Shown here in pieces: positions 8,797 to 54,194 of a DNA stretch of 64,000 nt. Under the pieces are notes generated by a model. That model saw only the letters and a list, made by a program, of their open reading frames with translations. It was not told where the DNA came from and made no database searches. The position numbers and the translations under genes were made by a program. The stretch covers positions 124,001-188,000 of IMG/VR virus record IMGVR_UViG_3300028829_003504. One strand, given 5' to 3'. How positions within the stretch are numbered: the first letter of the stretch is position 1; every line of letters starts with the position of its first letter.

Positions 8797-8807
8797 TATA
8801 ATTCCAA

Positions 8808-9347
8808 TTATTCGTTGCAGTCGGTGCAATCACTATTTACACTTTTAAGTGTATTAGACCTATTATGTGTAGAGGTACTTAGTCTACCGGACGTAATACC
8901 TTGAAAACTAGATCCGTTCAAAGTGACAGGCTTACTTATGAAGAAAGGCTGCAAAGCATTATATAGCAGACTAGGCACTCCTTGATTAAGTTCCATGTAC
9001 GAAGTAAGCGACTCATACTGGTCAAGCACCTTGCTGGTAATAGATCTTTGCAGTAAAGCGTAACGCCATTCGTGCAGGTCCTCAGTATTATAATCCAAGG
9101 CACGGCCTTTAACATAGTTCTCTAAGCCCTCAGGGTCAGTACAATTAGTGAGTCCGTTAATTGAATTCTTAGTAATCTCAAATTTATCATTAAGAATTAT
9201 GCTGGACGCAAAAGACATAGAGGCTATAGGATAGGTTGTAATAATCTTATCACCTATGTCATGTACTATTACGGGCATTTTAAGTACAACGATTTCAGGA
9301 TCGTGTGCTCTGACCCTAGGCCATTGTAGTAATAAATAGTGAAACAT
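8808..9347 (-). CDS. Hypothetical protein between the topoisomerase subunit genes
   Basis: 179 aa ORF filling the gyrB-gyrA gap. Confidence 0.7.
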   Translation of the reverse strand: MFHYLLLQWPRVRAHDPEIVVLKMPVIVHDIGDKIITTYPIASMSFASSIILNDKFEITKNSINGLTNCTDPEGLENYVKGRALDYNTEDLHEWRYALLQRSITSKVLDQYESLTSYMELNQGVPSLLYNALQPFFISKPVTLNGSSFQGITSGRLSTSTHNRSNTLKSVNSDCTDCNE

Positions 9348-9369
9348 GCGGGGTTCCTATTATTCGAGA

Positions 9370-11391
9370 TTAATGTTTAAGGCCAATAAGCTTACGTCTA
9401 GCTTCGGGTGAATCACCAACAACAGCAGTAAACCATTTGTCCATTTCAGGACTACACGCTGGGTTGATTTTAAATAAGCGGCGAGTTTCTGGGTTCATAC
9501 CAAAGTATTCTAACTCGTCTTCCGACATTTCGCCGAGTCCTTTGATGCGCTTAACACCAGTCTTACTGGTCCCTTTAGGAAGTTGGTCAGTAACTTCTTC
9601 GAGAGTCATACCGCCGTAGAATTGTCCGTTATGATTAATACTGAACAAGGGGTTATCAACTACGTAGACTAAACCTTCTTTATATACGTCAGGTACGAAC
9701 TTATGTAAGAAGCCAAGCAATGAAGTACCGATATGGAATCCATCAGGGTCGGCATCAGGCATGATGATAATAGCACCACGAACACGAAGTTTATCAATAC
9801 TGAATTGAGGAACACCCGTGTTACGCTTATCTATCTTCAACTCAAGACCAAGAGCAATCAGCAAATCTTGTATTACTTTATTGTTCACAACTTTATCAAG
9901 AGAAGCACTAACAGCATTCAAGGGCTTACCTCTAAGCTTCAACACTTCTTGGTACTCAGGGTCACGCGCGTTCTTAGCAGTACCACCAGCAGAGTCACCT
10001 TCTACAATGTAGAGTTCACGATGTTCTGGTTTTGCATCAGGTGCAATGGTTAATACTTCTGGAATGATTGCACCTTTCGATTTTTTCTTAGTATCGGAAA
10101 GAGATTTCATTACTGACTTCAACCCTTCAACTTGCTTCTGGAATTCAGTAGCACGTTTGATTAGGTTCTTAGCGATGTTGGGATTCTTCTTGAAGTACTC
10201 AGTCAGGGGATCGACTAACATATCCTCAACGTCTTTATCAACTTTCGATTCCAACTTATCTTTTATCTGACCGCTGAATTGCGCGCCGTGCATTTTCCAT
10301 TCGAAGAAACCTACAAGACCCATCATCAAGTCTTCACGCTTAAAGCCAAGGCCTTTCTTCTTACCTTTAGTTTTAGCTGCTGACTCATGAGGTTTGATTG
10401 CTCTGGCGAGTGCTGCTTTAAAGCCATTGACATGAGTACCGTGCTCAATACTCGGAGAACTGTTTACGAAAGATTTAAACAGTTCTGCATCAGTATGATC
10501 AGACCATTGAACGGCAACAGTCATGTAGTCTGTCTGTAGCGTGAATGGTTTACGGCCAACAGAATTCAATTCGTTCTCGTCCATAAATATTTTAGGTATA
10601 GCATCAAGACCTTTCTTGTTGACCATTGTCTTAGACTTTAACTTACCTTTAACTACTTGCGATACTGTCAACGTTAATCCTGGATTAAGCAATGTCATAT
10701 TGCGTAACCAAGGGCCTACGGATTTAGCATTCTGCTTAGCAGGAATTGGTTTGAATGTTTTCTTTTTGCGCTCTGAACGACTAGCGTTTTCGGCAATGAT
10801 TGTAAAGTCAGGAGTAAAACGAACGATTGTACCGTAGCCGCTTTTCTTCTGCAATAGATCCATAACATCTTTTCCGGGCTTCTTGTTCTTTGGATTAGGA
10901 AAGTCCGTCTCACCTTTTGTGAATGATTGATAAGACCACTTACCTCCAAATGACGACCATACTTCAAGCTTAGCAGAGCAGGCGTTAACAGCAGCACTAC
11001 CGACACCATGCGTACCAGCAGATGTTTTATAGGCATCTTGATTGTTCTTACCGCCAGCATGTATGCGAGTGAATACGGCGGTAAGAGAGTTTATCTTATC
11101 ACCGCCTTTGAGTTTCTTCATACCGACTGGAATACCGCCCGCGAAATCGGCAACGATATAACTGTGTTTTGTTGGGTCAAGAACAATCTCACCTGCTTTA
11201 CATCGACCCGCTATGTATTCATCGTAGAAGTTATCCACTTGCTCTTTGATCATTCTGAAAAGCATCGGATTACCTAAGGCACCCATGTACATACTAGGGT
11301 TCATTCTTATGCCATCAAGGCCTTCAAGGATTTCAATACTTTCCGAGCTATAATCCTTACCTTTCGTGGCTTTCTTTTTCTTAGCTACCAT
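9370..11391 (-). CDS. gyrB: Type IIA topoisomerase B subunit (GyrB/ParE-like)
   Basis: LEGLDGIRMNPSMYMG, HAGGK, GTHGVGSAAVNA, TOPRIM VEGDSAGG, LRGKPLN, DADPDG, RIKGLGEM. Confidence 0.95.
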   Translation of the reverse strand: MVAKKKKATKGKDYSSESIEILEGLDGIRMNPSMYMGALGNPMLFRMIKEQVDNFYDEYIAGRCKAGEIVLDPTKHSYIVADFAGGIPVGMKKLKGGDKINSLTAVFTRIHAGGKNNQDAYKTSAGTHGVGSAAVNACSAKLEVWSSFGGKWSYQSFTKGETDFPNPKNKKPGKDVMDLLQKKSGYGTIVRFTPDFTIIAENASRSERKKKTFKPIPAKQNAKSVGPWLRNMTLLNPGLTLTVSQVVKGKLKSKTMVNKKGLDAIPKIFMDENELNSVGRKPFTLQTDYMTVAVQWSDHTDAELFKSFVNSSPSIEHGTHVNGFKAALARAIKPHESAAKTKGKKKGLGFKREDLMMGLVGFFEWKMHGAQFSGQIKDKLESKVDKDVEDMLVDPLTEYFKKNPNIAKNLIKRATEFQKQVEGLKSVMKSLSDTKKKSKGAIIPEVLTIAPDAKPEHRELYIVEGDSAGGTAKNARDPEYQEVLKLRGKPLNAVSASLDKVVNNKVIQDLLIALGLELKIDKRNTGVPQFSIDKLRVRGAIIIMPDADPDGFHIGTSLLGFLHKFVPDVYKEGLVYVVDNPLFSINHNGQFYGGMTLEEVTDQLPKGTSKTGVKRIKGLGEMSEDELEYFGMNPETRRLFKINPACSPEMDKWFTAVVGDSPEARRKLIGLKH

Positions 11392-28165: not shown

Positions 28166-28966
28166 TTAAGCACTGTCGTTTAACTCGGCAGTGTAATATT
28201 GAATAGTAGGTAGTGTGCCTTTCTTCTTACGTAACCATTTACGTACACGCTCATGCAACTTACCTGTTGTGTTCTTACCTTGTCGATCGGTATCAACTCC
28301 CCAGAATTTCTCTTTGTCCCAGGGGGCTATCTCAACAATAGGCACATCCTCGGTTCCCATAAGCATCTCGCCCATAACTACATTCTGAGAGTACTTGGCT
28401 TTAAGAATCTCAAACATAATAGACTCTTTAACTTCATCCCAATCATCGCGTAATGGACAGCCTGCTTTAGCGCTGCCTTGATAACGGGCATCTTTAGGCT
28501 TTATGCAATTGCGAATCTTAGTGCGATGTTCGGCGCTTTCCGTTTTCATGTACTGGAAGGCCTGTTCAGCACTATAGAACATTATGTATGCGTCGTTCAC
28601 TAAACAATAGACTGGTGCAACGTGCATATTGCTAAAGATTTCATACCCAGGAGTAGTAACCTTACCGAATGTTATTTCATTGTGCTTGAAAGGTTTAGGT
28701 TTAGGTTTAGGTTTACGTAGACCGGGAGCCTTTTTAATCTTAACGTCAGTGTCGTCACGCGTAGAAGATTTCTTTTTCTTAGTAGAGGCTTTTTTGGTCT
28801 CAGGAGATTCGGATTTAGCATCAAGCTTCTCCACAGACGCACGTATGCGTTCTACTGTAAGCTTGCCTGGGATATCAAACTCTCGTAATTCTTTTAAAAG
28901 CTTTAAAGTTGATTTGCCTCGGTAGCCAATCTTACGTAAGGCTGGCATAAGTTTAATTTGAGCCAC
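28166..28966 (-). CDS. NADAR (YbiA-like) protein with Lys-rich N-terminal extension
   Basis: FSNMH, SAEQAFQYMK, WDEVKESIM..ILKAKYSQN, IVEIAPWD..FWG, GKNTTGK. Confidence 0.9.
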   Translation of the reverse strand: MAQIKLMPALRKIGYRGKSTLKLLKELREFDIPGKLTVERIRASVEKLDAKSESPETKKASTKKKKSSTRDDTDVKIKKAPGLRKPKPKPKPFKHNEITFGKVTTPGYEIFSNMHVAPVYCLVNDAYIMFYSAEQAFQYMKTESAEHRTKIRNCIKPKDARYQGSAKAGCPLRDDWDEVKESIMFEILKAKYSQNVVMGEMLMGTEDVPIVEIAPWDKEKFWGVDTDRQGKNTTGKLHERVRKWLRKKKGTLPTIQYYTAELNDSA

Positions 28967-31621: not shown

Positions 31622-32665
31622 TTAAGAATGGGTAATGATTTTTTGTTTTACGGCCTGTAGATAAAGTTGACCGCTAGCTAAGTTTTTGGCCTTGGCCTCA
31701 CACATGATATCGAATTCAGGTAAAAATGAAAGGGCCCAGCTATTCATTCTTTTATTACCGAACAACATACTGTGGGCACGTAGTTTAGTTTTTGGGAAAC
31801 CCATAGAGATAAGTTCGTCAAAGTTGAACATTCTATTTCTAGGTAATCCTAAAGTGTACTGCTCTTTACTATTTGAATAATGGATTGTAGGTCTTTTTCC
31901 ACGCCAACTGTCTTTTATGTACTTTAACCTCCCATCAGTAGATCTTATATATTCACCTTCACTGTTAATCCAATGGTGATGAATATCTAATACCAAGCCA
32001 ATTTTCTTATACAAAGGTAGCAGGTCATCTATACTGGCTCCAAACTCGTCGTTTTCTAAAGTAATAACTCTACGGGCTTCAGGTGACAGTCTGCTATAGG
32101 TCCGTTTAAACTCAGGTATTCCACCCCGACCAGATAGATGCACATTGACCTTCATGTCCAACTTCTTCTTTGCAAAACCTAAATATTTACAAATGTCTAC
32201 ATGATGCTCAAATTCCAATAGGGACGATGATACTACTTCAGGTTTATCGGAAGCTAGAACCGTAAACTGACCTGGATGGAAAGATAACTTAACGTTCAGT
32301 CTACGTGCAAGGTCCCCTACAGGTTTAAGATTATCGGATAGATACTTCTGTACATCGGGTTTATCATAGAACCAAGACCACGTCCTGTGTGTTGCGCCTG
32401 GACATATACTTGAACCTAGGCGCAACATACGTAGTTGTTCTGGGTACTCAGATAACTTGCGTACTAAGTTACGTATGGCTTTACAGTTGTTTTGCATAAT
32501 CTCATATAGACGGTCCTCTGCAATACTCTTGTTTTCATTTAACCATTTTATAGTAGTGCTCTGGAACCTGTAAGGTTTTACCCAACGCTCGGATTCTGCT
32601 TTAGATGAAGCTTGTGCTTCTACATCGGGAGGTAACTCGTACACGCACGCAAATCCAATCTTCAT
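31622..32665 (-). CDS. uvsE: UV damage endonuclease UvsE/UVDE
   Basis: KIGFAC, RMLRLGS, LSFHPGQFTVLAS, ITLENDE, LVLDIHHHW, HYS, LRAHS, DIMCEAKAKNLA. Confidence 0.95.
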   Translation of the reverse strand: MKIGFACVYELPPDVEAQASSKAESERWVKPYRFQSTTIKWLNENKSIAEDRLYEIMQNNCKAIRNLVRKLSEYPEQLRMLRLGSSICPGATHRTWSWFYDKPDVQKYLSDNLKPVGDLARRLNVKLSFHPGQFTVLASDKPEVVSSSLLEFEHHVDICKYLGFAKKKLDMKVNVHLSGRGGIPEFKRTYSRLSPEARRVITLENDEFGASIDDLLPLYKKIGLVLDIHHHWINSEGEYIRSTDGRLKYIKDSWRGKRPTIHYSNSKEQYTLGLPRNRMFNFDELISMGFPKTKLRAHSMLFGNKRMNSWALSFLPEFDIMCEAKAKNLASGQLYLQAVKQKIITHS

Positions 32666-40323: not shown

Positions 40324-40399
40324 TGGTGGGTCGTGCAAGATTCGAACTTGCGGCAAATTGGTTAAAAGCCAACTGCTCTACCAACTGAGCTAACGACCC
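40324..40399 (-). tRNA. tRNA-Lys(UUU)
   Basis: GGGTCGTTAGCTCAGTTGGTAGAGCAGTTGGCTTTTAACCAATTTGCCGCAAGTTCGAATCTTGCACGACCCACCA; 76 nt cloverleaf with encoded CCA. Confidence 0.97.
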
Positions 40400-40775: not shown

Positions 40776-42296
40776 TTAATCTTCTTCGTCCGCAACTAGG
40801 TCACCTTTACCTGCACAGATAAGAGCGAAATTCTTGAGAGCTTTACCATTCGCCAATTGCTTCTTACACCAGAAGCGTATATCAACAGGCTTAACACCAA
40901 GTAAGTCGCAAGTTTCTTTTACCTGTCGCTTGTTACCTAACACCAGTGCTTTGAATGATAACCAAGAACACTTCTTAGCTCCGTGTAAGGGACAATCTTC
41001 GTGGAATTTCATATTACCACGAGTACCGCCTACTACGCCTAACATCTTCAAGAAGTTCCAAGTATCAAACACTGGATCTAGGCCTCTAGCCACACCATCA
41101 GCATCACGAATCCAGATACGTGCAAATGTATCTTGATACTGTAGCCCGCCAAGTTTGTTCTTGATAACTTTCAAGTTGATGAAACGATATTCGTCGTTTC
41201 CTTCGTGCTCAACAGACTTCTCATCCATAGTAGGACCTTTACCCCAACCTGAAGGTAGAGCACGGCTGGTAGATTTTATTCTACAGTCAGAGAAGAATTT
41301 CAACGCTTCACCTCCCGGCTCATACTCAGGATTACCAAACATAGTCGCAGGCTTCTGTCGTAATTGATTAACCCCAAATACTGTCATGCGTTTCTTCTTC
41401 ATAGAACCTTTAATGCGTTTAAGTTCTTTGGAGAACATCCGCGCTTGCAGGGCCATTGCATTGCTACCTTCGTCCGTATCTTCTTGCCTAGGTAACATAG
41501 CAGGATAGGAATCTAGTAGCGCGATTGCTTGCATCATACCATCTGCGGCAGGCACTTTAATTTTGTTATGCTTAGATAAGTACTTAGGGTCATATACAGA
41601 TTTGAATCGCTTGAGTAATTTCTTATCATGAGGGAACAAATAGTAATACTCTTTGCCTAATTTAACTTTATCAGGTAGTATTCTTTTTAGTCGATTATAG
41701 AATTCGAAAAATTCCTCGCCTCCATCAGTGGAGATATAATCAACGATCGGAGGTGTAATTTCCTCACCTGTATCGGGGTCTCTCTCTCCGAAGATTTGGC
41801 TCAACGTTTGCTTAACGCCTTGTGATTTTAGAATACTCTCAATGTAGTCAGGGCTACCTGAACCTTCGTAATCCCAGTAGCTGGCTTTACCCTCAAAGCC
41901 TTGTTTAATTATAGCTGACATTATTGTCATAGCTATTGTTGTCTTAGCGGATTGTTCACCACCAAAGATAGTGTACCAGCCACCTGATACGATACCACCG
42001 CCTATTAATAGATCAAGTGATACTAAACCTGTATGTAAACGAGGTTCGTCTGGGTCAAAAGCTGTACCTGCAAGACCCATCTTCTTCTTAACGTCTGTAA
42101 TGGATTCATCTAACATGTTTTCCAATAGAGATTTCGTTAAGGCGACTGCCTCTGAATGAGCGTTATCTGCAACTAAGGTAGCTTTATCGGAATTCTTGGC
42201 TTTCTTAGTTTTAGGAACATCAGCAACCTCAAGAGCCTTTTTGGCTCCTTTAGTTACTTTGGCTGATTTAGATCTAGTCGCTGTTTTAGTTGCCAT
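40776..42296 (-). CDS. recA: RecA/UvsX-like recombinase
   Basis: TGLVSLDLLIGGGI, Walker A GGEQSAKTT, DYE, LLDSY, ALQARMFS, VNQLR, MFGNPEYEPGGEALKFFSD, KNKLG. Confidence 0.93.
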   Translation of the reverse strand: MATKTATRSKSAKVTKGAKKALEVADVPKTKKAKNSDKATLVADNAHSEAVALTKSLLENMLDESITDVKKKMGLAGTAFDPDEPRLHTGLVSLDLLIGGGIVSGGWYTIFGGEQSAKTTIAMTIMSAIIKQGFEGKASYWDYEGSGSPDYIESILKSQGVKQTLSQIFGERDPDTGEEITPPIVDYISTDGGEEFFEFYNRLKRILPDKVKLGKEYYYLFPHDKKLLKRFKSVYDPKYLSKHNKIKVPAADGMMQAIALLDSYPAMLPRQEDTDEGSNAMALQARMFSKELKRIKGSMKKKRMTVFGVNQLRQKPATMFGNPEYEPGGEALKFFSDCRIKSTSRALPSGWGKGPTMDEKSVEHEGNDEYRFINLKVIKNKLGGLQYQDTFARIWIRDADGVARGLDPVFDTWNFLKMLGVVGGTRGNMKFHEDCPLHGAKKCSWLSFKALVLGNKRQVKETCDLLGVKPVDIRFWCKKQLANGKALKNFALICAGKGDLVADEED

Positions 42297-45454: not shown

Positions 45455-46132
45455 TTAGGCTCCTTTACTTATAACAGCGTCAGCAGTGGCGATAAGATGT
45501 TTACAAAGACCAGGCGTCTCACCTGGGTTAGTAAAGTTAGGCTTATCACCGTTGCCATATATAATACGCGCCGCGCCGTACTTGGCGTTTGCATATTCCC
45601 ACATGTATGTATTATTCTCACAGTCACATGATACTAGGACTTTCTGATTCCTATCTGAAATCTTCAAGTCGTGAAGTCTACCTATGATAGTAACTTTATG
45701 ATCTCGCGGCGTAGCGTCAGGTCGCCATGTATCAAAATGCCTACATGTGGCTGTAACCGCAGGTAACCCTGACGCCGTCTTAGTACGCTTGAACTTTCTA
45801 ACTGTAGTCTCAGAGCCATTCTCCTTCATCAATCTAGGAGTATTACGGTACAGTTGCTTCAAAGTCAAACCTTTCTTAGAAAGAGATGTCTCGGGAAGCT
45901 GCTGCACCAGGTTCTGACCTTGCAAAGGCATTATACGAACCTGTCTTACTTTTTGCGCCCTAGTAGTTCTAGTGGCTGCTTTCTTCGGCTTTGCTTTTGC
46001 TGCCGTAGACTCAAGACCTTTATACTTAGTTTTACGTGTCGAGGTACGGGCTTTACTGGCGCGTTCAGCGTTACGCTTAGCTGGAGACTTGGTTTTCTTA
46101 ACAGAGGATTTAATTCCAGTGTATTTGGGCAT
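45455..46132 (-). CDS. SWIM-like Zn-finger protein with basic N-terminus
   Basis: VSCDCE...NP...GLCKHLIA. Confidence 0.7.
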   Translation of the reverse strand: MPKYTGIKSSVKKTKSPAKRNAERASKARTSTRKTKYKGLESTAAKAKPKKAATRTTRAQKVRQVRIMPLQGQNLVQQLPETSLSKKGLTLKQLYRNTPRLMKENGSETTVRKFKRTKTASGLPAVTATCRHFDTWRPDATPRDHKVTIIGRLHDLKISDRNQKVLVSCDCENNTYMWEYANAKYGAARIIYGNGDKPNFTNPGETPGLCKHLIATADAVISKGA

Positions 46133-46167
46133 GACTATTCACCTTTTCAATATAGATTAAAAGTAAA

Positions 46168-46608
46168 TTACTTATCGTGAGTCATCCATTTCAACCCTTC
46201 TAGAGTATCGTGCAATTTAAACAATCGAGTCTTAGTGCCTTCTTTTGTTTCACCTACGATATAAAGATTAGCGCTGTAATTACTAGGTACCTTATCTTTA
46301 ATCTGTTTAAGGGAGGCATAAGATTTCTTACCTTTCTTCTTACCCTTATACAATGAGTAGGAAGAATACTTTTCGCCCAACCAGCTCTTAACAATCTCAA
46401 GCATTTCATCAGGATATTTGTACTGCATCTCCTCGTCATTCAAACGATAGAACATCGTGTTTGCACCGCCCTTACCGACTAGGTAAGTAACGCCAGCAAC
46501 AGTTGCTAAGAACTGCCACTGGAAAATCTTTCTTTCTTCGGGAGTCAATGAAGCTTCTTTAAGTAAAGCTCCTTTCACTTGGTCATGTAGTACTTTAAAT
46601 GGATTCAC
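46168..46608 (-). CDS. Hypothetical protein at the end of the modification operon
   Basis: 146 aa, GTG start. Confidence 0.65.
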   Translation of the reverse strand: MNPFKVLHDQVKGALLKEASLTPEERKIFQWQFLATVAGVTYLVGKGGANTMFYRLNDEEMQYKYPDEMLEIVKSWLGEKYSSYSLYKGKKKGKKSYASLKQIKDKVPSNYSANLYIVGETKEGTKTRLFKLHDTLEGLKWMTHDK

Positions 46609-46622
46609 GTTACCGCCTGTAG

Positions 46623-47510
46623 TTACAATAGTTCTTTTGGTATTTTACCTAACCGAACATCGTTATATATCGCAACTACTGATTTAGAGTTTCGTATATT
46701 CCAGTCAGAGCTAAGTAGTTTATCGCTAAAGTTGTCTGCGATGTTAGTATCACCTAATTGAAAGTTCTGGTGAGGCTTAACTATACATTTTTTCAAGTCA
46801 TCGGCAAAGGCTTCACGTAACTGGCGTTTCTGAGGCTTGTGCATCTCCTCGTAAGTCCCGACCGATAACATTTCTGCCCACACACGGCAAGTAGTGAAAG
46901 GTATGTGGAAGATTTTATCTTTCTTGTAAGCCAAGTTCTGGAAGAAAGTATTTTGAATCTTTACGTCACCGCGAAAGTTAGATTGCCAGTACTTCTTAAC
47001 AATATCTTTGGCGTGCATACTAGGTTTCTTAGCAGTGGCGAAGTAGATATCTGAATCAAAGCCAACTACAATATGCTTTGCTGGGCAGTTACGTACTGCT
47101 TGCATCATAGGCCAGATACATTCAATTGAACTTTTCTTAATAAGACCTAACTTACCGACAGCATGTTTAACCCAACTCTTTAGGTGTTTCTCGGAAGAGT
47201 TTAAAATAACTGGATTAAACTCCAAGCCGTAAACTTCTGAGGCATGTTTAGCTGCTTTGAAGTCGGTACTTTCATGTGTGTCTAAAGTAAACGAAGTGAT
47301 TAATGGGCGGTGTCCTAGAGCTAGCATGGCCCATAGTACCGCGTGGCTATCCATACCGCTAGACATAAATACGGAAGTACTTTGTGTAGTAGGTATAGGC
47401 CGCAGGGCACTCATTAATGCCATCTTCATGTCAGCAGGGCGAGAGCAGTTGTCCTCAAGCTCTTGTCTAAACTTCTCTCGCATCTTTTTTGTGCTTTCTG
47501 ATATAGCCAC
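46623..47510 (-). CDS. Asparagine-synthetase-like ATP-dependent amide ligase (synthetase domain only)
   Basis: PP-loop VFMSSGMDS, STDFKAA, VGFDSDIYF (cf. GEGADELF), IPF, K..LREAF, FQLG; no Ntn glutaminase domain. Confidence 0.8.
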   Translation of the reverse strand: MAISESTKKMREKFRQELEDNCSRPADMKMALMSALRPIPTTQSTSVFMSSGMDSHAVLWAMLALGHRPLITSFTLDTHESTDFKAAKHASEVYGLEFNPVILNSSEKHLKSWVKHAVGKLGLIKKSSIECIWPMMQAVRNCPAKHIVVGFDSDIYFATAKKPSMHAKDIVKKYWQSNFRGDVKIQNTFFQNLAYKKDKIFHIPFTTCRVWAEMLSVGTYEEMHKPQKRQLREAFADDLKKCIVKPHQNFQLGDTNIADNFSDKLLSSDWNIRNSKSVVAIYNDVRLGKIPKELL

Positions 47511-47520
47511 GCACAGTCTC

Positions 47521-48534
47521 CTATTTTACGTTAAAGAACTCGTCTGCTTTGACAAACGCCGTAAGCAACTCAGGTTCGCGTGTAGGATCGAATACAGGTA
47601 CGCTGTATTGCGCTTTCAGCTTATCACGTAAGGCAGCGTATACTTCGAAGCTTACTTCACGGCTAAATAAAGAGATTGCACCTAGACGTACATTAGGATT
47701 AGAAAAACGAGCAACCTGTAAGTTGAATCGAATTGTCTCATCTAAATCAATAGGCGTAGTAGTATCATTAATAATAGTACGGCTAGGATCGTGGCAGGCG
47801 ATCATCATATCAGGCTGTGAGCCTTGAATGATCGCATAAGTAGAACCGCCGAAACTAGGATGCAATATAGAGCCTTGACCTTCAACAACGTCAATGTGAT
47901 TATGGGGTGCAGAAGGTGTCTCTTGCTCAAGTGCCCCTACAATGAAATCAGCAGGTATCGTGTCGTTGGTAATGCCTGCACCGCTGATCAAGTAGCCTGT
48001 CTGGCCAGTTGCAACGAAACGACTGGAGTAACTTTGATTTAGCAATTCTTTCCATACTGATAAGGCTGTGAACTTCTTGCCTGATGCACAATCTGTACCG
48101 AAGGTAAGAATACGATAACCTGAACGTTCCTCGCCCGTACCTTTAATCCAATCGATAGGTTTATGTCGGAAATCGTATACTTCTATTCCGTTTAAGTCAC
48201 CAAACTCAGCAAGCAACACAGGCTCAAGTTTAGCATGAGAGCCTGATGCTATATTTAAGCCCAGGTCAATTGCTTCTTTACATACGCTAAGTACTCTAGA
48301 ATTGAAGTTACTTACTTCTCGAGGACTGAATCCGAGTAATAATGTTTTAGCGCCTGCTTCTTTAGCTTGCGCTAAACTCATATCAGGAAGACCTAGGTCG
48401 TAGGCTTCTTCGCTATCACGGTGTTGAGCCAGACATCGCTCAGGGGCCCAATCGACAATACCACATGCTGTCTTTACTTTACGGAATATAGTTTCGGAGC
48501 CTACATATATAATAAATGGATGTTGAATATTCAT
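47521..48534 (-). CDS. DUF1611 / DgcN-like P-loop protein (N-acetyltransferase family)
   Basis: Start MNIQHPF; KTACGIVDW.PE, DLGLPDMS, GAKTLLLG, GTDCASGKKFTAL, FVATGQTG, DFIVGA, VVEGQGSILHPSF, GSQPD...CH. Confidence 0.88.
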   Translation of the reverse strand: MNIQHPFIIYVGSETIFRKVKTACGIVDWAPERCLAQHRDSEEAYDLGLPDMSLAQAKEAGAKTLLLGFSPREVSNFNSRVLSVCKEAIDLGLNIASGSHAKLEPVLLAEFGDLNGIEVYDFRHKPIDWIKGTGEERSGYRILTFGTDCASGKKFTALSVWKELLNQSYSSRFVATGQTGYLISGAGITNDTIPADFIVGALEQETPSAPHNHIDVVEGQGSILHPSFGGSTYAIIQGSQPDMMIACHDPSRTIINDTTTPIDLDETIRFNLQVARFSNPNVRLGAISLFSREVSFEVYAALRDKLKAQYSVPVFDPTREPELLTAFVKADEFFNVK

Positions 48535-48548
48535 TTGTTTACCTTGTG

Positions 48549-49325
48549 TTATTTGATGCAGACCCAGCCTGCGAAGTTTAAATGACGATAGAAGCAATCG
48601 ATGTTCTTAAAGCCCGCAAGCGTTAACATTTCCTCATTGGCTCTAGCGGTTTGCGGAACAAGAACGCCTTCGAGTGAGGCTTTCTTGCGATCAATATCTT
48701 CGTAAGAATAACCATTACTGTGTTTCATTTTATGATACTCACCGACAAATAATTTGTTCAATCTACTACCACTACCTAGAATCTTCTCCACAAAGATAAA
48801 GGCTCCGCCGACAGGTAAGGCATCATAGATATTCTGAATGATTTCAAGTCGGTACTCTATAGGAGTAAACTGGATAGTTAGTATAGAAAGAATCAAACCA
48901 TGCTTCTCAGGCCAACCTATAGTTTGAGGACACTGAAAAATATGAGGCTGCCTCAAATCATCTCGATACACTTCAACGTTTCGGTTCTCAATGAAACGAT
49001 CGTCAAGCTCGGTCAGCATAGGCTCAGATATCTCAATAGCATAGCAGCCTATAGTAGGGTCTTTAGTGAACGGGGCGAGTGCTTCACCTCGACTAGCTCC
49101 TAGATCAAGGACAGTACGTAGACCGAAGTTTGAGCGGTTTTGCTCTGCTCTAGGTAAAGCATTCAATACGTCCATACCTAACTGGTAAGTCAGACTACGC
49201 ATCATGTCGTAGCTAGGTATACTACGTGATAGCATGTTATCAAAAGATTGTGCAACATCCTGGTTAAACTCCCACTTGTCGCCTGGGACGTGCGTATCTT
49301 CTCGGACTTTGGGTTCGTCTTTCAC
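48549..49325 (-). CDS. cmoA: CmoA-like carboxy-S-adenosylmethionine synthase
   Basis: WEFNQDVAQSFDNMLSRSIPSY (cf. FPDMIQRSVPGY), DLGASRG, TIQF, FVEK, K.SNGYS..DI.RKK.SLEGV, LNFAG. Confidence 0.88.
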   Translation of the reverse strand: MKDEPKVREDTHVPGDKWEFNQDVAQSFDNMLSRSIPSYDMMRSLTYQLGMDVLNALPRAEQNRSNFGLRTVLDLGASRGEALAPFTKDPTIGCYAIEISEPMLTELDDRFIENRNVEVYRDDLRQPHIFQCPQTIGWPEKHGLILSILTIQFTPIEYRLEIIQNIYDALPVGGAFIFVEKILGSGSRLNKLFVGEYHKMKHSNGYSYEDIDRKKASLEGVLVPQTARANEEMLTLAGFKNIDCFYRHLNFAGWVCIK

Positions 49326-49438: not shown

Positions 49439-49804
49439 TTACCAGCTATCTTTATAGGGGTTTTCCGTTTCAGTCAGGTCATACTTAGATAGAGGGACTT
49501 CATCGGATAGGTAGGTAATAGGGTCTCTTAAAATACATAATACACTTCGAGTAACGTAATCTGACACAGGTGTGGCTGCTTGAAGTATGTACCCTCCTGA
49601 GTCAATCTGTGCGCCTGTATAGGTCGAGTAGTTAATACTGTTTTTAAGTCGCTCAACATCTAGTGCGAACTCAGGATCAGTAACGGTATCCCGTTTGTGG
49701 TCAAAAGCCATGTGCGTACCAAGCTCAATCAAACGTAAACCTAATATCTTAGATCGCTCTCTGCTATAGAAAGGTAGAATTAGATTCTTGAATAGTTTAA
49801 GCAA
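49439..49804 (-). CDS. Hypothetical protein
   Basis: 121 aa, TTG start uncertain. Confidence 0.55.
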   Translation of the reverse strand: MLKLFKNLILPFYSRERSKILGLRLIELGTHMAFDHKRDTVTDPEFALDVERLKNSINYSTYTGAQIDSGGYILQAATPVSDYVTRSVLCILRDPITYLSDEVPLSKYDLTETENPYKDSW

Positions 49805-49937
49805 GGCAGAACAGTCCGATACAAAAGCCTGTAAGAAAAGCCACTGATAATCCAGCTGTCATGTAGATGTTGAATCTATCAATGATTTTCTTACGAGGCC
49901 ATGTGCTTTTGAATAAGTAGATCTTATTAAAGAGCAT
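49797..49937 (-). CDS. 46-aa membrane peptide
   Basis: ATG directly after the transferase stop; MLFNKIYLFKSTWPRKKIIDRFNIYMTAGLSVAFLTGFCIGLFCLA. Confidence 0.5.
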   Translation of the reverse strand: MLFNKIYLFKSTWPRKKIIDRFNIYMTAGLSVAFLTGFCIGLFCLA

Positions 49938-51002
49938 CTATATACCCTTACCGCTTACGGGGCCTTTAGTATAGTCTAAACCACAGCCATCGGCAATAAC
50001 CTTAAGCAGATTGTTGACAATCTCTTTAGTTATACAGTACATCATTTGCGGAGGTACGGAACGACCAAGACGCTCCCATTGCTGCTCATACGTACCTATT
50101 AACTTGAAGTCTTCCGGGAAACCGCACACTACCTTCAATTCTTCGATCGTGTACTTACGCTGTACGCCCTCAAACGTCTCGATAAACCCACCAGAACTAA
50201 ACTGAGCCGTAGGTGAAGTAGCACCGTCACTAGCCGTAATGGTAGGATGAGGAACTTGCGCAGTAGCCCAGTTAAGGGTTCCTCCGGCTTCTTTAGATCT
50301 AAGCATAGCGATGTGCGGCAGTTTCTCCTGCACAGTAACCTGTCTGTGTGCAGGTTTAGGGAACACAGGCTTCAAGTCGTACTTCTTAGCAAGGTCTTTT
50401 CTGATGCCGACGTAGATTATACGTTCACGCCCTTGAGGAACACCTAACCAAGAACCGTTTATCTTTGCAGCACGTACAACGTAACCGCATTCAGCAAGCT
50501 TACCAGTTATTTCTTTGAAGTAACCTTTAGCATCACCTTTAATAAGGCCAGTAACGTTTTCTGCTACGAACACCCAAGGCTTTAAACCTTTTAACTCACG
50601 GCAGAATTCAAAGAACAAATCGTCTACACGTTGCTTAACGCCTTCTGAGTAATCCTTTGCTTCGCCCCATCCATCTTCACGAGTACCTGCTGTAGAGAAC
50701 GCACTGCATGGTGGGCTTCCGTCAAGAAAAGGTAAGTGTCCTTTCTTTATTCCTAAAAGCTTCAATACGTCGGAAGGTTTAACCTTTCGGATGTCTGAAC
50801 CATCGCAGAAGCTTTTAACGTGGTTGGCTTCATACGTTTCACGCGCAACGGGAATAAATTCGTTAGCGTATTTTATATCAATACCCGCCATTTTGTGCCC
50901 TGTACAAGAACCACCACAACCTGAGAAGAAACTTGCTCCTAAGAACAATTTCTTCTTCTTGTTTATCTGCTTCATTGTAGGAATCGTAGGAGGAAGTTTC
51001 AT
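49938..51002 (-). CDS. DNA cytosine-C5 transferase, predicted carboxymethyltransferase
   Basis: Motif I FFSGCGG, IV GSPPCSAFS, VI AENV, VIII VPQGRERI, X QQWERLGRSVPP (Asn replaced by Arg). Start placed at MKLPP. Confidence 0.9.
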   Translation of the reverse strand: MKLPPTIPTMKQINKKKKLFLGASFFSGCGGSCTGHKMAGIDIKYANEFIPVARETYEANHVKSFCDGSDIRKVKPSDVLKLLGIKKGHLPFLDGSPPCSAFSTAGTREDGWGEAKDYSEGVKQRVDDLFFEFCRELKGLKPWVFVAENVTGLIKGDAKGYFKEITGKLAECGYVVRAAKINGSWLGVPQGRERIIYVGIRKDLAKKYDLKPVFPKPAHRQVTVQEKLPHIAMLRSKEAGGTLNWATAQVPHPTITASDGATSPTAQFSSGGFIETFEGVQRKYTIEELKVVCGFPEDFKLIGTYEQQWERLGRSVPPQMMYCITKEIVNNLLKVIADGCGLDYTKGPVSGKGI

Positions 51003-51115
51003 ATAACCCAACCTAGTTTCGTTTGAATTTGAATAAGAGTATAGTTAAATATAATAGATGCCTGTTCCATAAGAGTAAGCATCAATATAATCTCTTGTAT
51101 ACATATATGCGGCAT
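50999..51115 (-). CDS. 38-aa peptide coupled to the transferase start
   Basis: AGGA RBS; TGA overlaps the next ATG (ATGA). Confidence 0.35.
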   Translation of the reverse strand: MPHICIQEIILMLTLMEQASIIFNYTLIQIQTKLGWVI

Positions 51116-51132
51116 AATATGTCCTATTAGAA

Positions 51133-52023
51133 TTATTTACCTGCGAAGCGGTACTTACATCGAGGACAACACTGATCAAGTTCATCATCAAATGTATCCT
51201 CACCGTATTCCTCAAATGAGGCAGGACCTTTACCTTTTGACTTAGAATCAGTAGACTCGTCACTGGAACCTAGTGAAGGTAACTCGGGAAGTGTTTTAAT
51301 TTTAAGGGCGTCAAGCCCCATAGTATCGATATCAAACCCTCCGTCGCGTATTTCAAGTTCTTCCACCATGAAAGCAAGTTTACTATTGTCGAACTCACCA
51401 CCATGTGCGTTAGCTGCAATGTTTGCGGCGAATTCTACTTTCTTATCGGACCAGTCTACTACGCGGAATGGAATACGGTAGTTTCGATTATCTCCTAGAA
51501 TAACAGTCATGAATCCTTCTTCGATAGTACCGTGCTGGCAATCTTTAATAGGATTAGTTATGATTTTAGTCTCATAACCTTTCTTCCTGATACTAGAAGT
51601 ACGTTGATGTCCAGATACTAAGTGGCCTGAACGTCGGTTAAAAACGATACCTGACAGGTCACCGAATTCTTCGTATGACTTACCTAAGTTATCTAATCTA
51701 CGTGCAGTAATGAAACGTGGGTTATAGCTCGCACCTCTTAAGTCAGTTAGGCCCCAATCTCCTTTACGTTTAGAAGTCTTCTTATTCTCCCGAACCTTCT
51801 TAACTTTAAATTTCTTTGTGGCTACTTTTGATATACCTGATATCTCAAGTGAACCAGAAGCAGAAGTGGACCCAGACTTAGGTTTAACTATTTTATCCAG
51901 TTTCCCTGATTTCTTGGCCTTTTTAGTCTTTTTAGCTACTTTAGACTCAGAGGTAGCCTTAGATTTCTTTGTTAATTTCGCAGCTTTCCCTCTAACAGCT
52001 ACTTTCGTTTCTTTCTTTGCCAT
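51133..52023 (-). CDS. ParB/Srx N-terminal-domain protein with Lys-rich N-terminus and C-terminal Zn ribbon
   Basis: YNPRFI...LGKS.EEFG...IVFN....LVSGHQR...NIAAN..GGEFD; CPRCKYRF. Confidence 0.85.
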   Translation of the reverse strand: MAKKETKVAVRGKAAKLTKKSKATSESKVAKKTKKAKKSGKLDKIVKPKSGSTSASGSLEISGISKVATKKFKVKKVRENKKTSKRKGDWGLTDLRGASYNPRFITARRLDNLGKSYEEFGDLSGIVFNRRSGHLVSGHQRTSSIRKKGYETKIITNPIKDCQHGTIEEGFMTVILGDNRNYRIPFRVVDWSDKKVEFAANIAANAHGGEFDNSKLAFMVEELEIRDGGFDIDTMGLDALKIKTLPELPSLGSSDESTDSKSKGKGPASFEEYGEDTFDDELDQCCPRCKYRFAGK

Positions 52024-52119: not shown

Positions 52120-52533
52120 CTAAAGTTCGTCGTCCGTATCATCAAAATCTTCGTCGTCATCTTCACCAGAATCTTCGTCGTCATCTTCACCAGAATCTTC
52201 GTCGTCATCACCGAAGTCCGCAGAACCATCACTATCTTCACCGGTCTTAGTATCATCGTCTACTAAGGAGTCAGGATCAGATCCACCTGCTTTCTTATCT
52301 TTCTTTTTCTTATCATCTTCTTCACCTAGCTCTTTTATTAACTCTTCGTTACGTTCAGCCATGCGCTTCTTGGCCATTTTCTTTTCATGCTCAATAAGAT
52401 CCTTATCGTCTAAGGTAGACGGATTGTTAATCCCAGGAACATTAGGTCTATAAGGCTGCTTACTAAAGGCTTTTAGCATAAACTTATCAGTAACTAAGCA
52501 GTCGGATTTTAGAAACAAAAGCACAGGGCGCAT
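52120..52533 (-). CDS. Hypothetical protein with acidic repeat tail
   Basis: 27-nt EDSGEDDD repeats at about 52146-52213. Confidence 0.7.
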   Translation of the reverse strand: MRPVLLFLKSDCLVTDKFMLKAFSKQPYRPNVPGINNPSTLDDKDLIEHEKKMAKKRMAERNEELIKELGEEDDKKKKDKKAGGSDPDSLVDDDTKTGEDSDGSADFGDDDEDSGEDDDEDSGEDDDEDFDDTDDEL

Positions 52534-54194
52534 TAGATATCTCCTAACTCAGGAAGTTCATTGACTAAGTCTTGCATTACTGATTTACTTAACTTAGCGA
52601 GGGCTTTACGAATGTTAGCAGGCGTCATACCCATCGACATACCTTCCTTGATGTTATTAAGGAACTTAGTATCTGAGGCTATTTGTTTTTTAGCGTCGTC
52701 TGGTCGTCCGCCTACCTTCAATGATCTAGTAACGGCATTGAACTTATTAGATGCGGCAGGTGTAGAAAAGAACTTGCTTCCGTCAGTAAATACAGAACTG
52801 ATAATTACTTTCTTAGCTGTATGTATTTGCATCTTAGCCATAAGACCATTAATGGAAATCACAGCCTGTTTGCCGTCTACGTAAGTTGTAATGTTAGCCT
52901 GGTTTGGATTCAGTATAGGTTCTATGTTCAAAATAGACGAGCTGGTATCAGTATTATTTTTAAGTTGCTTCAATAACTTAATAGCAACATCGAATGCAGT
53001 ACCTTTAGATTCGAACTGTACTGCGTCACGGCCATCAACAGCAGACTCAATATTCTTCATACCTGCTTTCTTCATTGCATCAGCCATGAACTCACCGAGC
53101 TCCGAGCCAATACCCTGAGCGATAGTATAGCCTTGAGCTAGCTCTTGGTTGATACGGCGTTGCTTGTCACTCAAGCCGGAGGTTAAAGCTTTGTTTTTCT
53201 TAACCTTCTTAGGTTGCTTCACACTAAGTATGTTGGCGTACGGTACTTTGAAAGGACCAGGCATGATAACTTCATCGTCATAAACCAAAGCATATTTTTT
53301 CAATGTTTTGTGTATTGCATCAGCCGTTCTAGTCTTTCCGTCTTCGTCAGTATATTCGAAAGATAAGACTCCATCAATGTCATCTTGGGTAAACTTAGGT
53401 GTAGGTTTACGGGCTTTAAGAACTTTATTAGCAGCTTTCTGGGCAGCTTTGTTTGAAGTATCAGAAACTTTATTAGCAACGCCCGTACCAGCAGCATTAC
53501 CTAATAAGGTATTGAACTTCATTACTTCTTTAAGATCTTTGTTGTACGCTGTCTGGGCGTCAAGTAACTTAGGAAGTTTAGAGGCTACAGCTTTCAATCT
53601 AGTACCTAACGTGTCAAAGCCTTTACGTTTCTTCAAACGGTCTATAGTACGTTGGTCGAAGGAGGCTTTAAGGAATGCACCTAAGTTATCAACTAATGCA
53701 GATTCGGCTTGACCTAATTTCTTTTTAAGCTTCAACAAGATATCGTACTGAGCAACAACTACTTTACCTTTAGCGCCCCATACTACCTTTGCAGTTTCTT
53801 GTTGATTCTTGGTAGATGACGTTGAAGACATCTTACCTGCTTCTTTACCCAACAAAGTACTAAAGGCGTTAAGACCTTTCATACCCTTGTCGTGTGCTTC
53901 ACGTAGGACAGCTAGCTTGGAGGCTTGTACCGCTACACGCTTTAATCTAACAGGTAAAGTATCGAAGCCTTTACGTTTCTTCAATTTAGCAATAGACTTA
54001 TCATCTAGTTCCGTTTTAAGAAATTCTGTAAGGGTAGATAGTAAACTATTTTCGTCTTCGCCTAACTTCTTTTTAAGTTTGATCAATGTGTCGAAGTTAG
54101 CAAGGAGGGTTTTTCCCTTAGCACCCCAAATAAGTTTAGCTGTTGCCTGCTGCTTCTTGTTGGCTGACTCTGAAATCAGTACATATCTAGCCAT
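52533..54194 (-). CDS. Basic protein with duplicated ~115-aa N-terminal domain, possibly virion-internal
   Basis: TAK..WGAKGK...LKKKLG...LKKRKGFDTL..RLK.VA occurs twice. Confidence 0.8.
   Translation of the reverse strand: MARYVLISESANKKQQATAKLIWGAKGKTLLANFDTLIKLKKKLGEDENSLLSTLTEFLKTELDDKSIAKLKKRKGFDTLPVRLKRVAVQASKLAVLREAHDKGMKGLNAFSTLLGKEAGKMSSTSSTKNQQETAKVVWGAKGKVVVAQYDILLKLKKKLGQAESALVDNLGAFLKASFDQRTIDRLKKRKGFDTLGTRLKAVASKLPKLLDAQTAYNKDLKEVMKFNTLLGNAAGTGVANKVSDTSNKAAQKAANKVLKARKPTPKFTQDDIDGVLSFEYTDEDGKTRTADAIHKTLKKYALVYDDEVIMPGPFKVPYANILSVKQPKKVKKNKALTSGLSDKQRRINQELAQGYTIAQGIGSELGEFMADAMKKAGMKNIESAVDGRDAVQFESKGTAFDVAIKLLKQLKNNTDTSSSILNIEPILNPNQANITTYVDGKQAVISINGLMAKMQIHTAKKVIISSVFTDGSKFFSTPAASNKFNAVTRSLKVGGRPDDAKKQIASDTKFLNNIKEGMSMGMTPANIRKALAKLSKSVMQDLVNELPELGDI

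What the first reader, a model, noticed from the sequence alone, without database searches (positions are those of the whole stretch)
50055..50066. Motif X Asn-to-Arg (GRSV) in the C5 transferase predicts carboxy-SAM use
Seen: QQWERLGRSVPP where C5 methyltransferases normally read GNAV/GNSV, with motifs I, IV, VI and VIII intact. Established: replacing this Asn with Lys in M.MpeI (N374K) yields a DNA carboxymethyltransferase through a salt bridge to the Cx-SAM carboxylate. A cmoA gene 0.6 kb downstream is independent support. An automated pipeline would call this a plain Dcm.
Basis: partly seen in the sequence, partly recalled or inferred. Interest (0 to 1): 0.85.

Follow-up and report, generated by a model that had tools for sequence, protein, structure and literature searches.

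The report
Phage DNA cytosine carboxymethyltransferase (CmoX) gene cluster

Summary
Window 50055-50066 (- strand) encodes GRSV within QQWERLGRSVPP, which is motif X of an intact 354-aa C5-methyltransferase-fold gene (49938-51002, -).

The Arg aligns with R350 of SpCmoX, the Synechococcus phage S-B43 enzyme (PDB 8YF3). That enzyme was shown to be a Cx-SAM-dependent DNA cytosine C5-carboxymethyltransferase, and its R350 contacts the Cx-SAM carboxylate (PMC12783734). 8YF3 is the best PDB match by sequence (E 2e-60) and by fold (TM 0.73/0.78). The catalytic Cys and all named cofactor contacts are conserved.

In 87 related loci, 74 of 82 Arg-type enzymes have a cmoA nearby and 0 of 5 non-Arg relatives do. 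One syntenic relative has Asn and lacks the whole cmoA-ligase block.

The gene sits in a co-directional cluster: ParB-like, CmoX, two small ORFs, CmoA, a DgcN/DUF1611-like enzyme, a CmoY-like amide ligase. The final base is therefore probably an amide derivative of 5cxmC, not 5cxmC itself.

Verdict: interpretation supported, a new member of a known kind. The unreported part is the DUF1611 gene directly upstream of the ligase, seen in seven contexts. Close relatives carry a chorismate mutase instead.

The parts
49938..51002 (-). CmoX-type DNA cytosine C5-carboxymethyltransferase, 354 aa. Catalytic Cys99 lies in SPPC. Motif X Arg314 is encoded within 50055-50066.
   Evidence: PF00145 E 6.5e-45. 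PDB 8YF3 E 2e-60. Foldseek top hit 8YF3, TM 0.73/0.78. R314 = SpCmoX R350, C99 = C98, and F26/E48/F49/D70 = F25/E47/F48/D69.
50055..50066 (-). The flagged codons G-R-S-V of motif X.
48549..49325 (-). CmoA-like carboxy-SAM synthase, 258 aa.
   Evidence: TIGR00740 CmoA E 4.8e-29, 101.7 bits, below the equivalog cut-off of 193. PDB 1IM8 (YecO) E 6e-19 and E. coli CmoA 4GEK E 1e-16, aligned end to end. 44% identity to PaBG 'tRNA (cmo5U34)-methyltransferase' and 26-28% to the biochemically active SpCmoA.
47521..48534 (-). DgcN/DUF1611-like P-loop enzyme, 337 aa, wedged between CmoA and CmoY. Its role is unknown and it is a candidate extra hypermodification step.
   Evidence: PF07755 E 6.7e-49 plus PF17396. 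NF041892 DgcN E 3.4e-88, 295.7 bits, below the 480 cut-off. PDB 7XRJ E 1e-54. Directly upstream of a CmoY-like gene in seven contexts.
46623..47510 (-). CmoY-like ATP-dependent (PP-loop, asparagine-synthetase C-domain) amide ligase, 295 aa, with no glutaminase domain.
   Evidence: PF00733 E 0.0014 and TIGR01536 E 1e-4, both weak. phrog_26038 E 4.6e-85. SSGMDS PP-loop and 19 invariant columns shared with SpCmoY, PaBG 'asparagine synthase' and others. 25% identity to SpCmoY and 41% to the closest relative's CmoY.
51133..52023 (-). ParB-like nuclease/DNA-binding domain protein, 296 aa, immediately upstream of CmoX.
   Evidence: phrog_620 ParB-like E 6.4e-25. 48% identity to PaBG 'putative ParB-like containing domain nuclease', which is likewise adjacent to its CmoX. 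ParBc proteins are reported as frequent CmoX neighbours.
49439..49937 (-). Two small ORFs between CmoX and CmoA: 46 aa, hydrophobic (49797-49937), and 121 aa (49439-49804). Function unknown.
   Evidence: Conserved only in the closest relative L004, at 77% and 48% identity. No Pfam or PHROG hit.
45455..46608 (-). Two conserved downstream ORFs: 146 aa (46168-46608) and 225 aa (45455-46132). They are syntenic backbone genes, not specific to the Cx-SAM system.
   Evidence: phrog_23597 and phrog_18980, both of unknown function. Homologues also follow the Asn-type methylase in L011, which has no cmoA or cmoY.

Best explanation
The gene at 49938-51002 (-) is a CmoX-family DNA cytosine C5-carboxymethyltransferase of an uncultured PaBG-like jumbo phage. 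It uses the ordinary C5-methyltransferase chemistry. Cys99 attacks C6 of a flipped-out cytosine, and the C5 carbanion takes a group from the sulfonium cofactor. Arg314 in motif X replaces the usual Asn and pairs with the carboxylate of carboxy-SAM, so a carboxymethyl group is transferred and 5-carboxymethylcytosine (5cxmC) is formed. The adjacent CmoA makes carboxy-SAM from SAM and prephenate. The CmoY-like PP-loop ligase then most likely adenylates the new carboxyl group and joins it to an amine. That amine is unknown here (it is glycine in phage S-B43). The DgcN/DUF1611-like enzyme encoded directly upstream of the ligase probably adds or prepares a further acyl/amine step. The resulting bulky modified cytosine would protect phage DNA from host restriction. 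What is shown here: homology, conserved residues, fold, gene order, and family-wide Arg/cmoA coupling. What is inferred: the activity of this particular enzyme, its target sequence, the amine used, and the role of the DUF1611 protein.
For: Arg314 aligns to SpCmoX R350. Cys99 aligns to C98. F26/E48/F49/D70 align to the Cx-SAM contacts F25/E47/F48/D69 named in the 8YF3 paper. 8YF3 is the best PDB hit by sequence (E 2.1e-60). It is also the best by fold for an AF2 model with pLDDT 90.9 (E 9e-28, TM 0.73/0.78, ahead of HaeIII and HhaI). SpCmoX accepts only Cx-SAM, makes 5cxmC in vitro and in E. coli in a cmoA-dependent way, and its product is converted by SpCmoY to a glycine amide. Arg is present in 117/120 closest homologues and SPPC in 120/120. 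In 87 non-redundant loci, Arg with cmoA nearby = 74, Arg without = 8 (several truncated contigs), non-Arg with cmoA = 0 of 5 (Fisher p 3.5e-5; the loci are not phylogenetically independent). L011 is a natural control: a syntenic relative (ParB-like, methylase at 56% identity, then the 146-aa homologue) with Asn in motif X and no cmoA/cmoY block. The same ParB-CmoX-CmoA-...-AsnS cluster occurs in Pseudomonas phage PaBG and in metagenomic jumbo-phage contigs. The genes are co-directional, with 10-35 nt gaps from CmoA to the 225-aa ORF.
Against: No biochemistry exists for this clade. Identity to SpCmoX is only 36-40% and the target-recognition region does not align, so the GC specificity of SpCmoX cannot be transferred. 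CmoA scores below NCBIfam's equivalog cut-off. The residue aligned to E. coli CmoA R199 is Lys here (R199 as a carboxylate-binding residue is from my memory of the CmoA structure papers). However, it is Glu in the active SpCmoA in the same alignment, so this column is not diagnostic. The CmoY-like ligase is very divergent: 41% identity to the closest relative's, where flanking genes are 80-86%, and it sits on a long branch in the tree. SpCmoX R350N was dead rather than SAM-using, so Arg is necessary but is not the only determinant.
Confidence: 0.85

Rival explanations
1. 5cxmC is the end product. CmoX and CmoA work as described, but the asparagine-synthetase-like and DUF1611 genes are unrelated neighbours or inactive, and no further hypermodification occurs.
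For: The CmoY-like protein is weakly similar to the proven SpCmoY (25% identity) and sits on a long branch. Its Pfam and NCBIfam hits are below the cut-offs. Many CmoX+CmoA loci in the sample have no detectable CmoY.
Against: The PP-loop SSGMDS and 19 invariant columns are kept across seven CmoY homologues, including SpCmoY. The gene is co-directional and 10 nt from its upstream neighbour. The CmoA/CmoY association is conserved in PaBG, Alexandravirus, S-B43 and metagenomic relatives. S-B43 DNA contains the amide and no free 5cxmC.
Confidence: 0.12
2. It is an ordinary SAM-dependent Dcm-type methylase that makes 5mC. The Arg is a neutral or structural substitution, and cmoA is nearby for another reason.
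For: Automated libraries call it a DNA cytosine methylase (TIGR00675 dcm superfamily, phrog_116). All classical motifs are intact.
Against: The Arg is invariant in 104/104 aligned close homologues and equals the Cx-SAM-contacting R350. SpCmoX did not use SAM. Asn-type relatives lack cmoA.
Confidence: 0.03
3. CmoA serves tRNA modification (cmo5U34) of phage or host tRNAs, as in bacteria, and is functionally unconnected to the methylase.
For: PHROG and GenBank annotations call the homologues 'tRNA methyltransferase'. The window carries one tRNA-Lys(UUU) gene.
Against: No CmoB-like (Methyltransf_9) protein was found among the 40-odd larger ORFs of the window scanned against Pfam. Only 64 kb of a 262-kb genome was available. 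cmoA is adjacent to CmoX in 74 of 82 Arg-type loci. tRNA-Lys(UUU) is not a cmo5U substrate (established knowledge: cmo5U occurs at U34 of tRNAs for Ala, Leu, Pro, Ser, Thr and Val).
Confidence: 0.02

Closest known systems
SpCmoX, DNA cytosine C5-carboxymethyltransferase of Synechococcus phage S-B43 (UniProt A0A514ABG7, PDB 8YF3; Yang et al., Nat Commun 2025, PMC12783734)
   Same: C5-MTase fold. SPPC catalytic Cys. Motif X Arg (R350 = R314 here). Conserved Cx-SAM contacts. Phage-encoded CmoA and an Asn-synthetase-like ligase in the same cluster. Best sequence and fold match in the PDB.
   Different: Only 36-40% identity. The target-recognition region is shorter and does not align, so specificity (GC in SpCmoX) is unknown here. 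Gene order differs: S-B43 has CmoA-CmoY-CmoX, while here it is ParB-CmoX-x-x-CmoA-DUF1611-CmoY. The host lineage differs: T4-like cyanophage versus PaBG-like jumbo phage.
Pseudomonas phage PaBG gp177-180 (Baikalvirus): 'DNA cytosine methylase', 'tRNA (cmo5U34)-methyltransferase', hypothetical, 'asparagine synthase'
   Same: Closest cultured relative: CmoX 55%, CmoA 44%, ParB-like 48% identity. Same ParB-CmoX-CmoA order and ERLGRSV motif X.
   Different: PaBG has no DUF1611 gene, and the 150-aa ORF sits between CmoA and the ligase. The PaBG genes are annotated generically, and the PaBG genome paper discusses no DNA modification.
M.MpeI N374K, engineered DNA carboxymethyltransferase (cited as ref. 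21 in PMC12783734)
   Same: A basic residue replaces the motif X Asn to pair with the Cx-SAM carboxylate. The product is 5cxmC.
   Different: It is engineered, uses Lys rather than Arg, is CpG-specific, retains SAM activity (from memory of the original report), and has no dedicated CmoA or ligase.
DgcN (DUF1611) D-glutamate N-acetyltransferase of marine bacteria (NF041892; PDB 7XRJ; Yu et al., ISME J 2023, cited in PMC12363236)
   Same: The window's 337-aa protein matches full length (E 3.4e-88; 7XRJ E 1e-54). It keeps 49 of 83 columns invariant in bacterial homologues, including the GxDxxxGK and EGQ..HP motifs.
   Different: It scores below the equivalog cut-off. In phages it is paired with a CmoY-like ligase, whereas the bacterial control pairs it with the DgcA racemase and an amino-acid transporter. 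Clade-specific substitutions are present.

Membership tests
CmoX (DNA cytosine C5-carboxymethyltransferase) | C5-MTase fold with catalytic Cys in an SPPC motif (SpCmoX S95-C98) | tested here: met
   GSPPC with Cys99 aligned to SpCmoX C98. PF00145 E 6.5e-45. AF2 model pLDDT 90.9 with 8YF3 as top fold hit.
CmoX (DNA cytosine C5-carboxymethyltransferase) | Arg at the motif X position that is Asn in methylases (SpCmoX R350), which contacts the Cx-SAM carboxylate | tested here: met
   R314 aligns to R350 in HMMER and MAFFT alignments. The same column is Asn in M.HaeIII.
CmoX (DNA cytosine C5-carboxymethyltransferase) | Conserved cofactor contacts F25, E47, F48, D69 and the cytosine-contacting Glu/Arg of motifs VI and VIII | tested here: met
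   F26, E48, F49, D70, E148 (ENV) and R192/R194 (QGRER) are invariant columns of alignment A1.
CmoX (DNA cytosine C5-carboxymethyltransferase) | Genomic association with a phage cmoA | tested here: met
   cmoA lies 612 nt downstream on the same strand. Family-wide coupling: 74/82 Arg-type versus 0/5 non-Arg.
CmoX (DNA cytosine C5-carboxymethyltransferase) | Cx-SAM-dependent formation of 5-carboxymethylcytosine in DNA, with no activity on SAM | not testable with these tools
   Requires an enzyme assay or LC-MS of nucleosides.
CmoA (carboxy-SAM synthase) | Full-length similarity to CmoA at the level of curated models | tested here: inconclusive
   TIGR00740 E 4.8e-29, but 101.7 bits against a cut-off of 193.3. 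End-to-end alignments to 1IM8 and 4GEK. 26-28% identity to the active SpCmoA, which is itself equally divergent from E. coli CmoA.
CmoA (carboxy-SAM synthase) | Arg199 of E. coli CmoA (carboxylate/prephenate contact; residue role recalled from memory) | tested here: inconclusive
   The aligned residue is Lys in the window and in L004, Arg in PaBG/L005/L007/AD1, and Glu in the active SpCmoA.
CmoY (5cxmC amide ligase, Asn-synthetase C-domain type) | PP-loop SGGxDS ATP-pyrophosphatase motif, no glutaminase domain, and adjacency to CmoA/CmoX | tested here: met
   SSGMDS at residues 49-54. S50, G52 and D54 are invariant with SpCmoY. The protein is 295 aa. Gene order.
CmoY (5cxmC amide ligase, Asn-synthetase C-domain type) | Glycine-carboxylate-binding pocket residues of the SpCmoY cluster, which determine the amine substrate | not tested
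   The residues are given only in figure images of the paper's supplement. 25% identity to SpCmoY.
DgcN (D-glutamate N-acetyltransferase, DUF1611) | Score above the NCBIfam equivalog cut-off, and pairing with the DgcA racemase | tested here: not met
   295.7 bits against a cut-off of 480. The phage genes pair with a CmoY-like ligase, whereas bacterial P0179 pairs with an MR_MLE racemase. It is a homologue, not an equivalog.

The most novel reading that the evidence does not exclude
A subset of CmoX systems makes a hypermodified cytosine different from the published 5-glycyl-carboxymethylcytosine. This subset includes the window, the Erwinia/Dickeya Alexandravirus phages and several marine jumbo-phage contigs. 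The reason would be a DgcN/DUF1611-family P-loop acyltransferase-like enzyme, always encoded immediately upstream of the CmoY-like ligase. It would add an unreported third step, for example N-acylation of an amine appended by the ligase, or transfer of the activated carboxymethyl group to a D-amino acid. In this window its arrival coincides with loss of the chorismate mutase gene and rapid divergence of the ligase.
Probability: 0.35. Interest if true: 0.6.

Novelty: new member of a known kind. Interest (0 to 1): 0.33.

Why it matters
The finding confirms that a single motif X residue lets one separate DNA carboxymethyltransferases from ordinary Dcm methylases directly in raw sequence. Current annotation libraries do not make this distinction. 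It also extends the experimentally defined CmoX system from a cyanophage to the PaBG-like and Alexandravirus jumbo phages, which include cultured Pseudomonas, Erwinia and Dickeya phages that could be tested directly.

The accessory genes seen here were not discussed in the founding paper. The DUF1611 enzyme sits next to the ligase. Sister genomes carry a chorismate mutase that would supply prephenate. Both point to further chemistry and to phage control of the prephenate supply.

Tried and rejected
- **Nucleotide search of the cluster against GenBank phages:** no match. The window is an uncultured phage, identical to IMG/VR contig IMGVR_UViG_3300028829_003504.
- **Direct alignment to M.MpeI and M.HhaI motif X:** M.MpeI never appeared in the PDB sequence searches, and HhaI matched only over the N-terminal domain. 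I relied instead on HaeIII alignments and on the HhaI N304 = R350 statement in PMC12783734.
- **Chorismate mutase in the window:** tblastn with the two CM_2 proteins of the relatives found nothing.
- **CmoB in the window:** none among the ORFs scanned.
- **Promoter and terminator scans:** at chance level.
- **Di- and tetranucleotide statistics:** GpC is not depleted (1.09). CCGG and GATC are under-represented, which says nothing about CmoX specificity.
- **DUF1611-linked ligases as a single clade:** rejected. At least three placements occur on the CmoY tree.
- **The 146-aa and 225-aa downstream ORFs as parts of the pathway:** rejected, because homologues persist next to an Asn-type methylase with no cmoA.
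- **The DgcN paper (PMC10030869):** not held. Two literature searches for 'DgcN' returned mostly unrelated acronyms.

Full report
**Observation**

The flagged bases 50055-50066 translate on the minus strand to GRSV, inside QQWERLGRSVPP. They belong to an uninterrupted ORF, 49938-51011. Its likely start is the ATG at 51002, giving 354 aa, which is the form present in public protein collections. The protein is a C5 cytosine methyltransferase by Pfam (PF00145, E 6.5e-45) and NCBIfam (dcm superfamily). Motifs I (FSGCGGS), IV (GSPPC), VI (ENV) and VIII (QGRER) are intact and invariant among relatives. In HMMER alignments the Arg falls on the motif X Asn of M.HaeIII (GNAVP) and of a fungal DNMT.

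**What it is**

The best match among all solved structures is 8YF3 (E 2.1e-60). This is SpCmoX of Synechococcus phage S-B43, described in Nat Commun, December 2025 (PMC12783734). That paper reports the following:
- SpCmoX transfers carboxymethyl from carboxy-SAM to cytosine C5. It does not use SAM.
- It needs CmoA (phage or E. coli) for activity in vivo.
- Its R350 replaces HhaI N304 and contacts the Cx-SAM carboxylate.
- The authors note the parallel with the engineered M.MpeI N374K.

I fetched the S-B43 locus (MN018232.1) and aligned it to the window.
- The window's R314 is in the column of R350, and Cys99 is in the column of C98.
- The named cofactor contacts F25/E47/F48/D69 correspond to invariant F26/E48/F49/D70.
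- An AlphaFold2 model built from 34 homologues is confident (pLDDT 90.9).
- Its best Foldseek hit in the PDB is again 8YF3 (E 9e-28, TM 0.73/0.78), ahead of HaeIII and HhaI.

**Is the Arg meaningful?**

Among the 120 closest proteins in a 5.8-billion-sequence collection, 117 have Arg at this position, 2 have Asn and 1 could not be placed. All 120 have SPPC. In an alignment of the 104 that are under 400 aa, Arg is 104/104.

I collected 80 IMG/VR loci with CmoX relatives, plus loci from assemblies and isolates, and searched each for CmoA. The 87 non-redundant loci split as follows:

| Motif X residue | cmoA within the locus | No cmoA in the locus |
|---|---|---|
| Arg | 74 | 8 (several on truncated contigs) |
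| Asn | 0 | 4 |
| Leu | 0 | 1 |

Fisher's exact test gives p 3.5e-5, with the caveat that the loci are related to one another.

The most telling case is L011. It is a syntenic relative: ParB-like gene, then a methylase 56% identical to the window's, then the homologue of the window's 146-aa ORF. Its motif X reads KRCGNSVPP, and the whole cmoA-ligase block is absent. Arg and cmoA therefore come and go together in the same genomic slot.

**Surroundings**

All genes from 52023 down to 45455 are on the minus strand with short gaps.

| Order | Coordinates | Gene | Evidence |
|---|---|---|---|
| 1 | 51133-52023 | ParB-like protein | phrog_620 E 6e-25 |
| 2 | 49938-51002 | CmoX | see above |
| 3 | 49797-49937 | 46-aa hydrophobic ORF | no family hit |
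| 4 | 49439-49804 | 121-aa ORF | no family hit |
| 5 | 48549-49325 | CmoA | TIGR00740 E 5e-29, below cut-off; end-to-end alignments to 1IM8 and E. coli CmoA 4GEK |
| 6 | 47521-48534 | DgcN/DUF1611-like protein | NF041892 E 3e-88, below cut-off; PDB 7XRJ E 1e-54 |
| 7 | 46623-47510 | Asn-synthetase-like PP-loop protein | aligns with SpCmoY, conserved SSGMDS, no glutaminase domain |
| 8 | 46168-46608 and 45455-46132 | two conserved ORFs of unknown function | phrog_23597, phrog_18980 |

Further out lie RecA, a PD-(D/E)XK nuclease, DnaG primase, DnaB helicase, type II topoisomerase subunits, UvdE and a NADAR protein. This is the replication and repair region of a large phage.

The window is identical to IMG/VR contig IMGVR_UViG_3300028829_003504, 261,788 bp. 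It has no nucleotide-level match among GenBank phages. The closest isolate is Pseudomonas phage PaBG, with CmoX at 55% identity. PaBG has the same ParB-CmoX-CmoA-hypothetical-'asparagine synthase' cluster under generic annotations. Its genome paper does not discuss DNA modification.

**Mechanism**

By homology to the S-B43 system, CmoA converts SAM and prephenate to Cx-SAM. CmoX then makes 5cxmC through the standard Cys-C6 covalent mechanism, with Arg314 selecting the carboxylated cofactor. The CmoY-like ligase adenylates the new carboxyl group and forms an amide.

In S-B43 the amine is glycine, and native DNA contains only the amide. Here the amine is unknown. The ligase is 25% identical to SpCmoY. 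It is only 41% identical to that of the closest relative L004, whose CmoX, CmoA and flanking ORFs are 80-86% identical to the window's. It also sits on a long branch of the CmoY tree. The target sequence is unknown as well, because the target-recognition region does not align with SpCmoX.

**What goes beyond the published description**

1. **The DUF1611 gene.**
   - The paper does not mention it.
   - It lies immediately upstream of a CmoY-like gene in seven contexts: the window, Dickeya phage AD1 (CmoA-DUF1611-AsnS, with CmoX 17 kb away), L015, L103, L104, L105 and L106.
   - Among 50,697 GenBank phage records it occurs only in 34 Erwinia/Dickeya Alexandravirus genomes, all of which also have CmoX and CmoA.
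   - Eight of the top 120 CmoX homologues share contigs with top DUF1611 homologues.
   - A bacterial DgcN control sits next to an MR_MLE racemase and an amino-acid ABC transporter instead.
   - The phage proteins keep 49 of 83 columns invariant in bacterial homologues and show clade-specific changes.
   - The DUF1611-linked ligases are not one clade, so the gene behaves as a portable add-on.
   - Its chemical role is unresolved. Possibilities are N-acylation of an appended amine, or transfer of an activated acyl group to a D-amino acid. Both are speculation.
2. **Chorismate mutase in sister contigs.** The closest relatives L004 (CmoX 86%) and L005/L006 (72%) carry a chorismate mutase (PF01817) between CmoX and CmoA. 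It would supply prephenate, the CmoA co-substrate, whose availability the paper flags as an open question. The window lacks this gene.

**Comparison and novelty**

This gene meets every sequence-testable defining feature of the CmoX family. Only the enzymatic activity is untested.

The paper's survey counted 5,615 candidate CmoX sequences, including IMG/VR data, so this gene is at most a new, uncharacterised member.

Automated annotation does call this gene a plain methylase and calls CmoA a 'tRNA methyltransferase'.

**Verdict**

- Observation confirmed.
- Interpretation supported.
- Confidence about 0.85 that this is a Cx-SAM-dependent DNA carboxymethyltransferase.
- Moderate-to-low interest for the core finding because it is published.
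- The DUF1611-ligase pairing and the chorismate mutase in relatives are the leads worth following.

Noticed in passing
window 47521-48534 (-); also L009:7016-8071, L015:7980-9032, L103:6001-7014, L104:6001-7038, L105:6001-7074, L106:700-1704: A DgcN/DUF1611-family gene sits directly upstream of the CmoY-like ligase in seven CmoX/CmoA contexts. It is absent from PHROGs and is not mentioned in the CmoX paper. A bacterial DgcN control pairs with a racemase instead.
   Followed up: partly
L004:9847-10134; L005:9022-9375; L006:4556-4909: The closest relatives of the window's phage encode a chorismate mutase (PF01817) between CmoX and CmoA. It would supply prephenate for carboxy-SAM synthesis. The window has no such gene at this position.
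   Followed up: partly
L011:1308-2327 (also L012, L013); L068, L086, L014: These are natural Asn-type relatives of CmoX (motif X GNSVPP/GNAVPP). L011 is syntenic with the window but lacks the cmoA-ligase block. Besides R314, positions R72, S119 and D127 of the window's CmoX also differ between the Arg and Asn types.
   Followed up: partly
L002:7986-10115 (Dickeya phage AD1 gp048) and Erwinia Alexandravirus homologues: The CmoX homologue of these phages is 709 aa, with the two halves of the methyltransferase domain separated by a large insertion (tblastn gives two pieces). Motif X reads ERLGRIC rather than GRxVPP. One other homologue (P0032) carries an intein Pfam domain.
   Followed up: no
L105:9058-10035: A PLP-dependent (PF00291 PALP) enzyme lies two genes after CmoA in a CmoX-DUF1611-CmoY-CmoA cluster. 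It may make an unusual amine or amino-acid substrate.
   Followed up: no
window 46623-47510 (-): The CmoY-like ligase is only 41% identical to that of contig L004, although the genes on both sides are 80-86% identical. It sits on a long branch of the CmoY tree. This suggests replacement or rapid change of substrate specificity coincident with gain of DUF1611.
   Followed up: partly
window 52120-52533 (-), repeat at 52126-52212: A 137-aa ORF has an extremely acidic C-terminus (DDDEDSGE repeated) encoded by a 24-nt tandem repeat of about 3 copies. No family hit.
   Followed up: no
window 52533-54194 (-): A 553-aa ORF with no Pfam or PHROG hit contains an internal duplication of about 120 aa (…QQATAKLIWGAKGK…KKRKGFDTL… occurs twice).
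   Followed up: no
window 40324-40399 (-): A single tRNA-Lys(UUU) gene lies just downstream of the RecA-like gene (40776-42296). PaBG also carries tRNA-Lys(UUU) genes near its CmoX cluster.
   Followed up: no
window 1-64000: CCGG (observed/expected 0.45) and GATC (0.61) are the most under-represented palindromic tetramers. GpC and CpG dinucleotides are near expectation.
   Followed up: no
window 28166-28966 (-), 31622-32665 (-), 7198-11391 (-): A NADAR domain protein, a UvdE UV-endonuclease and type II topoisomerase A and B subunits are encoded in the same co-directional replication/repair block.
   Followed up: no
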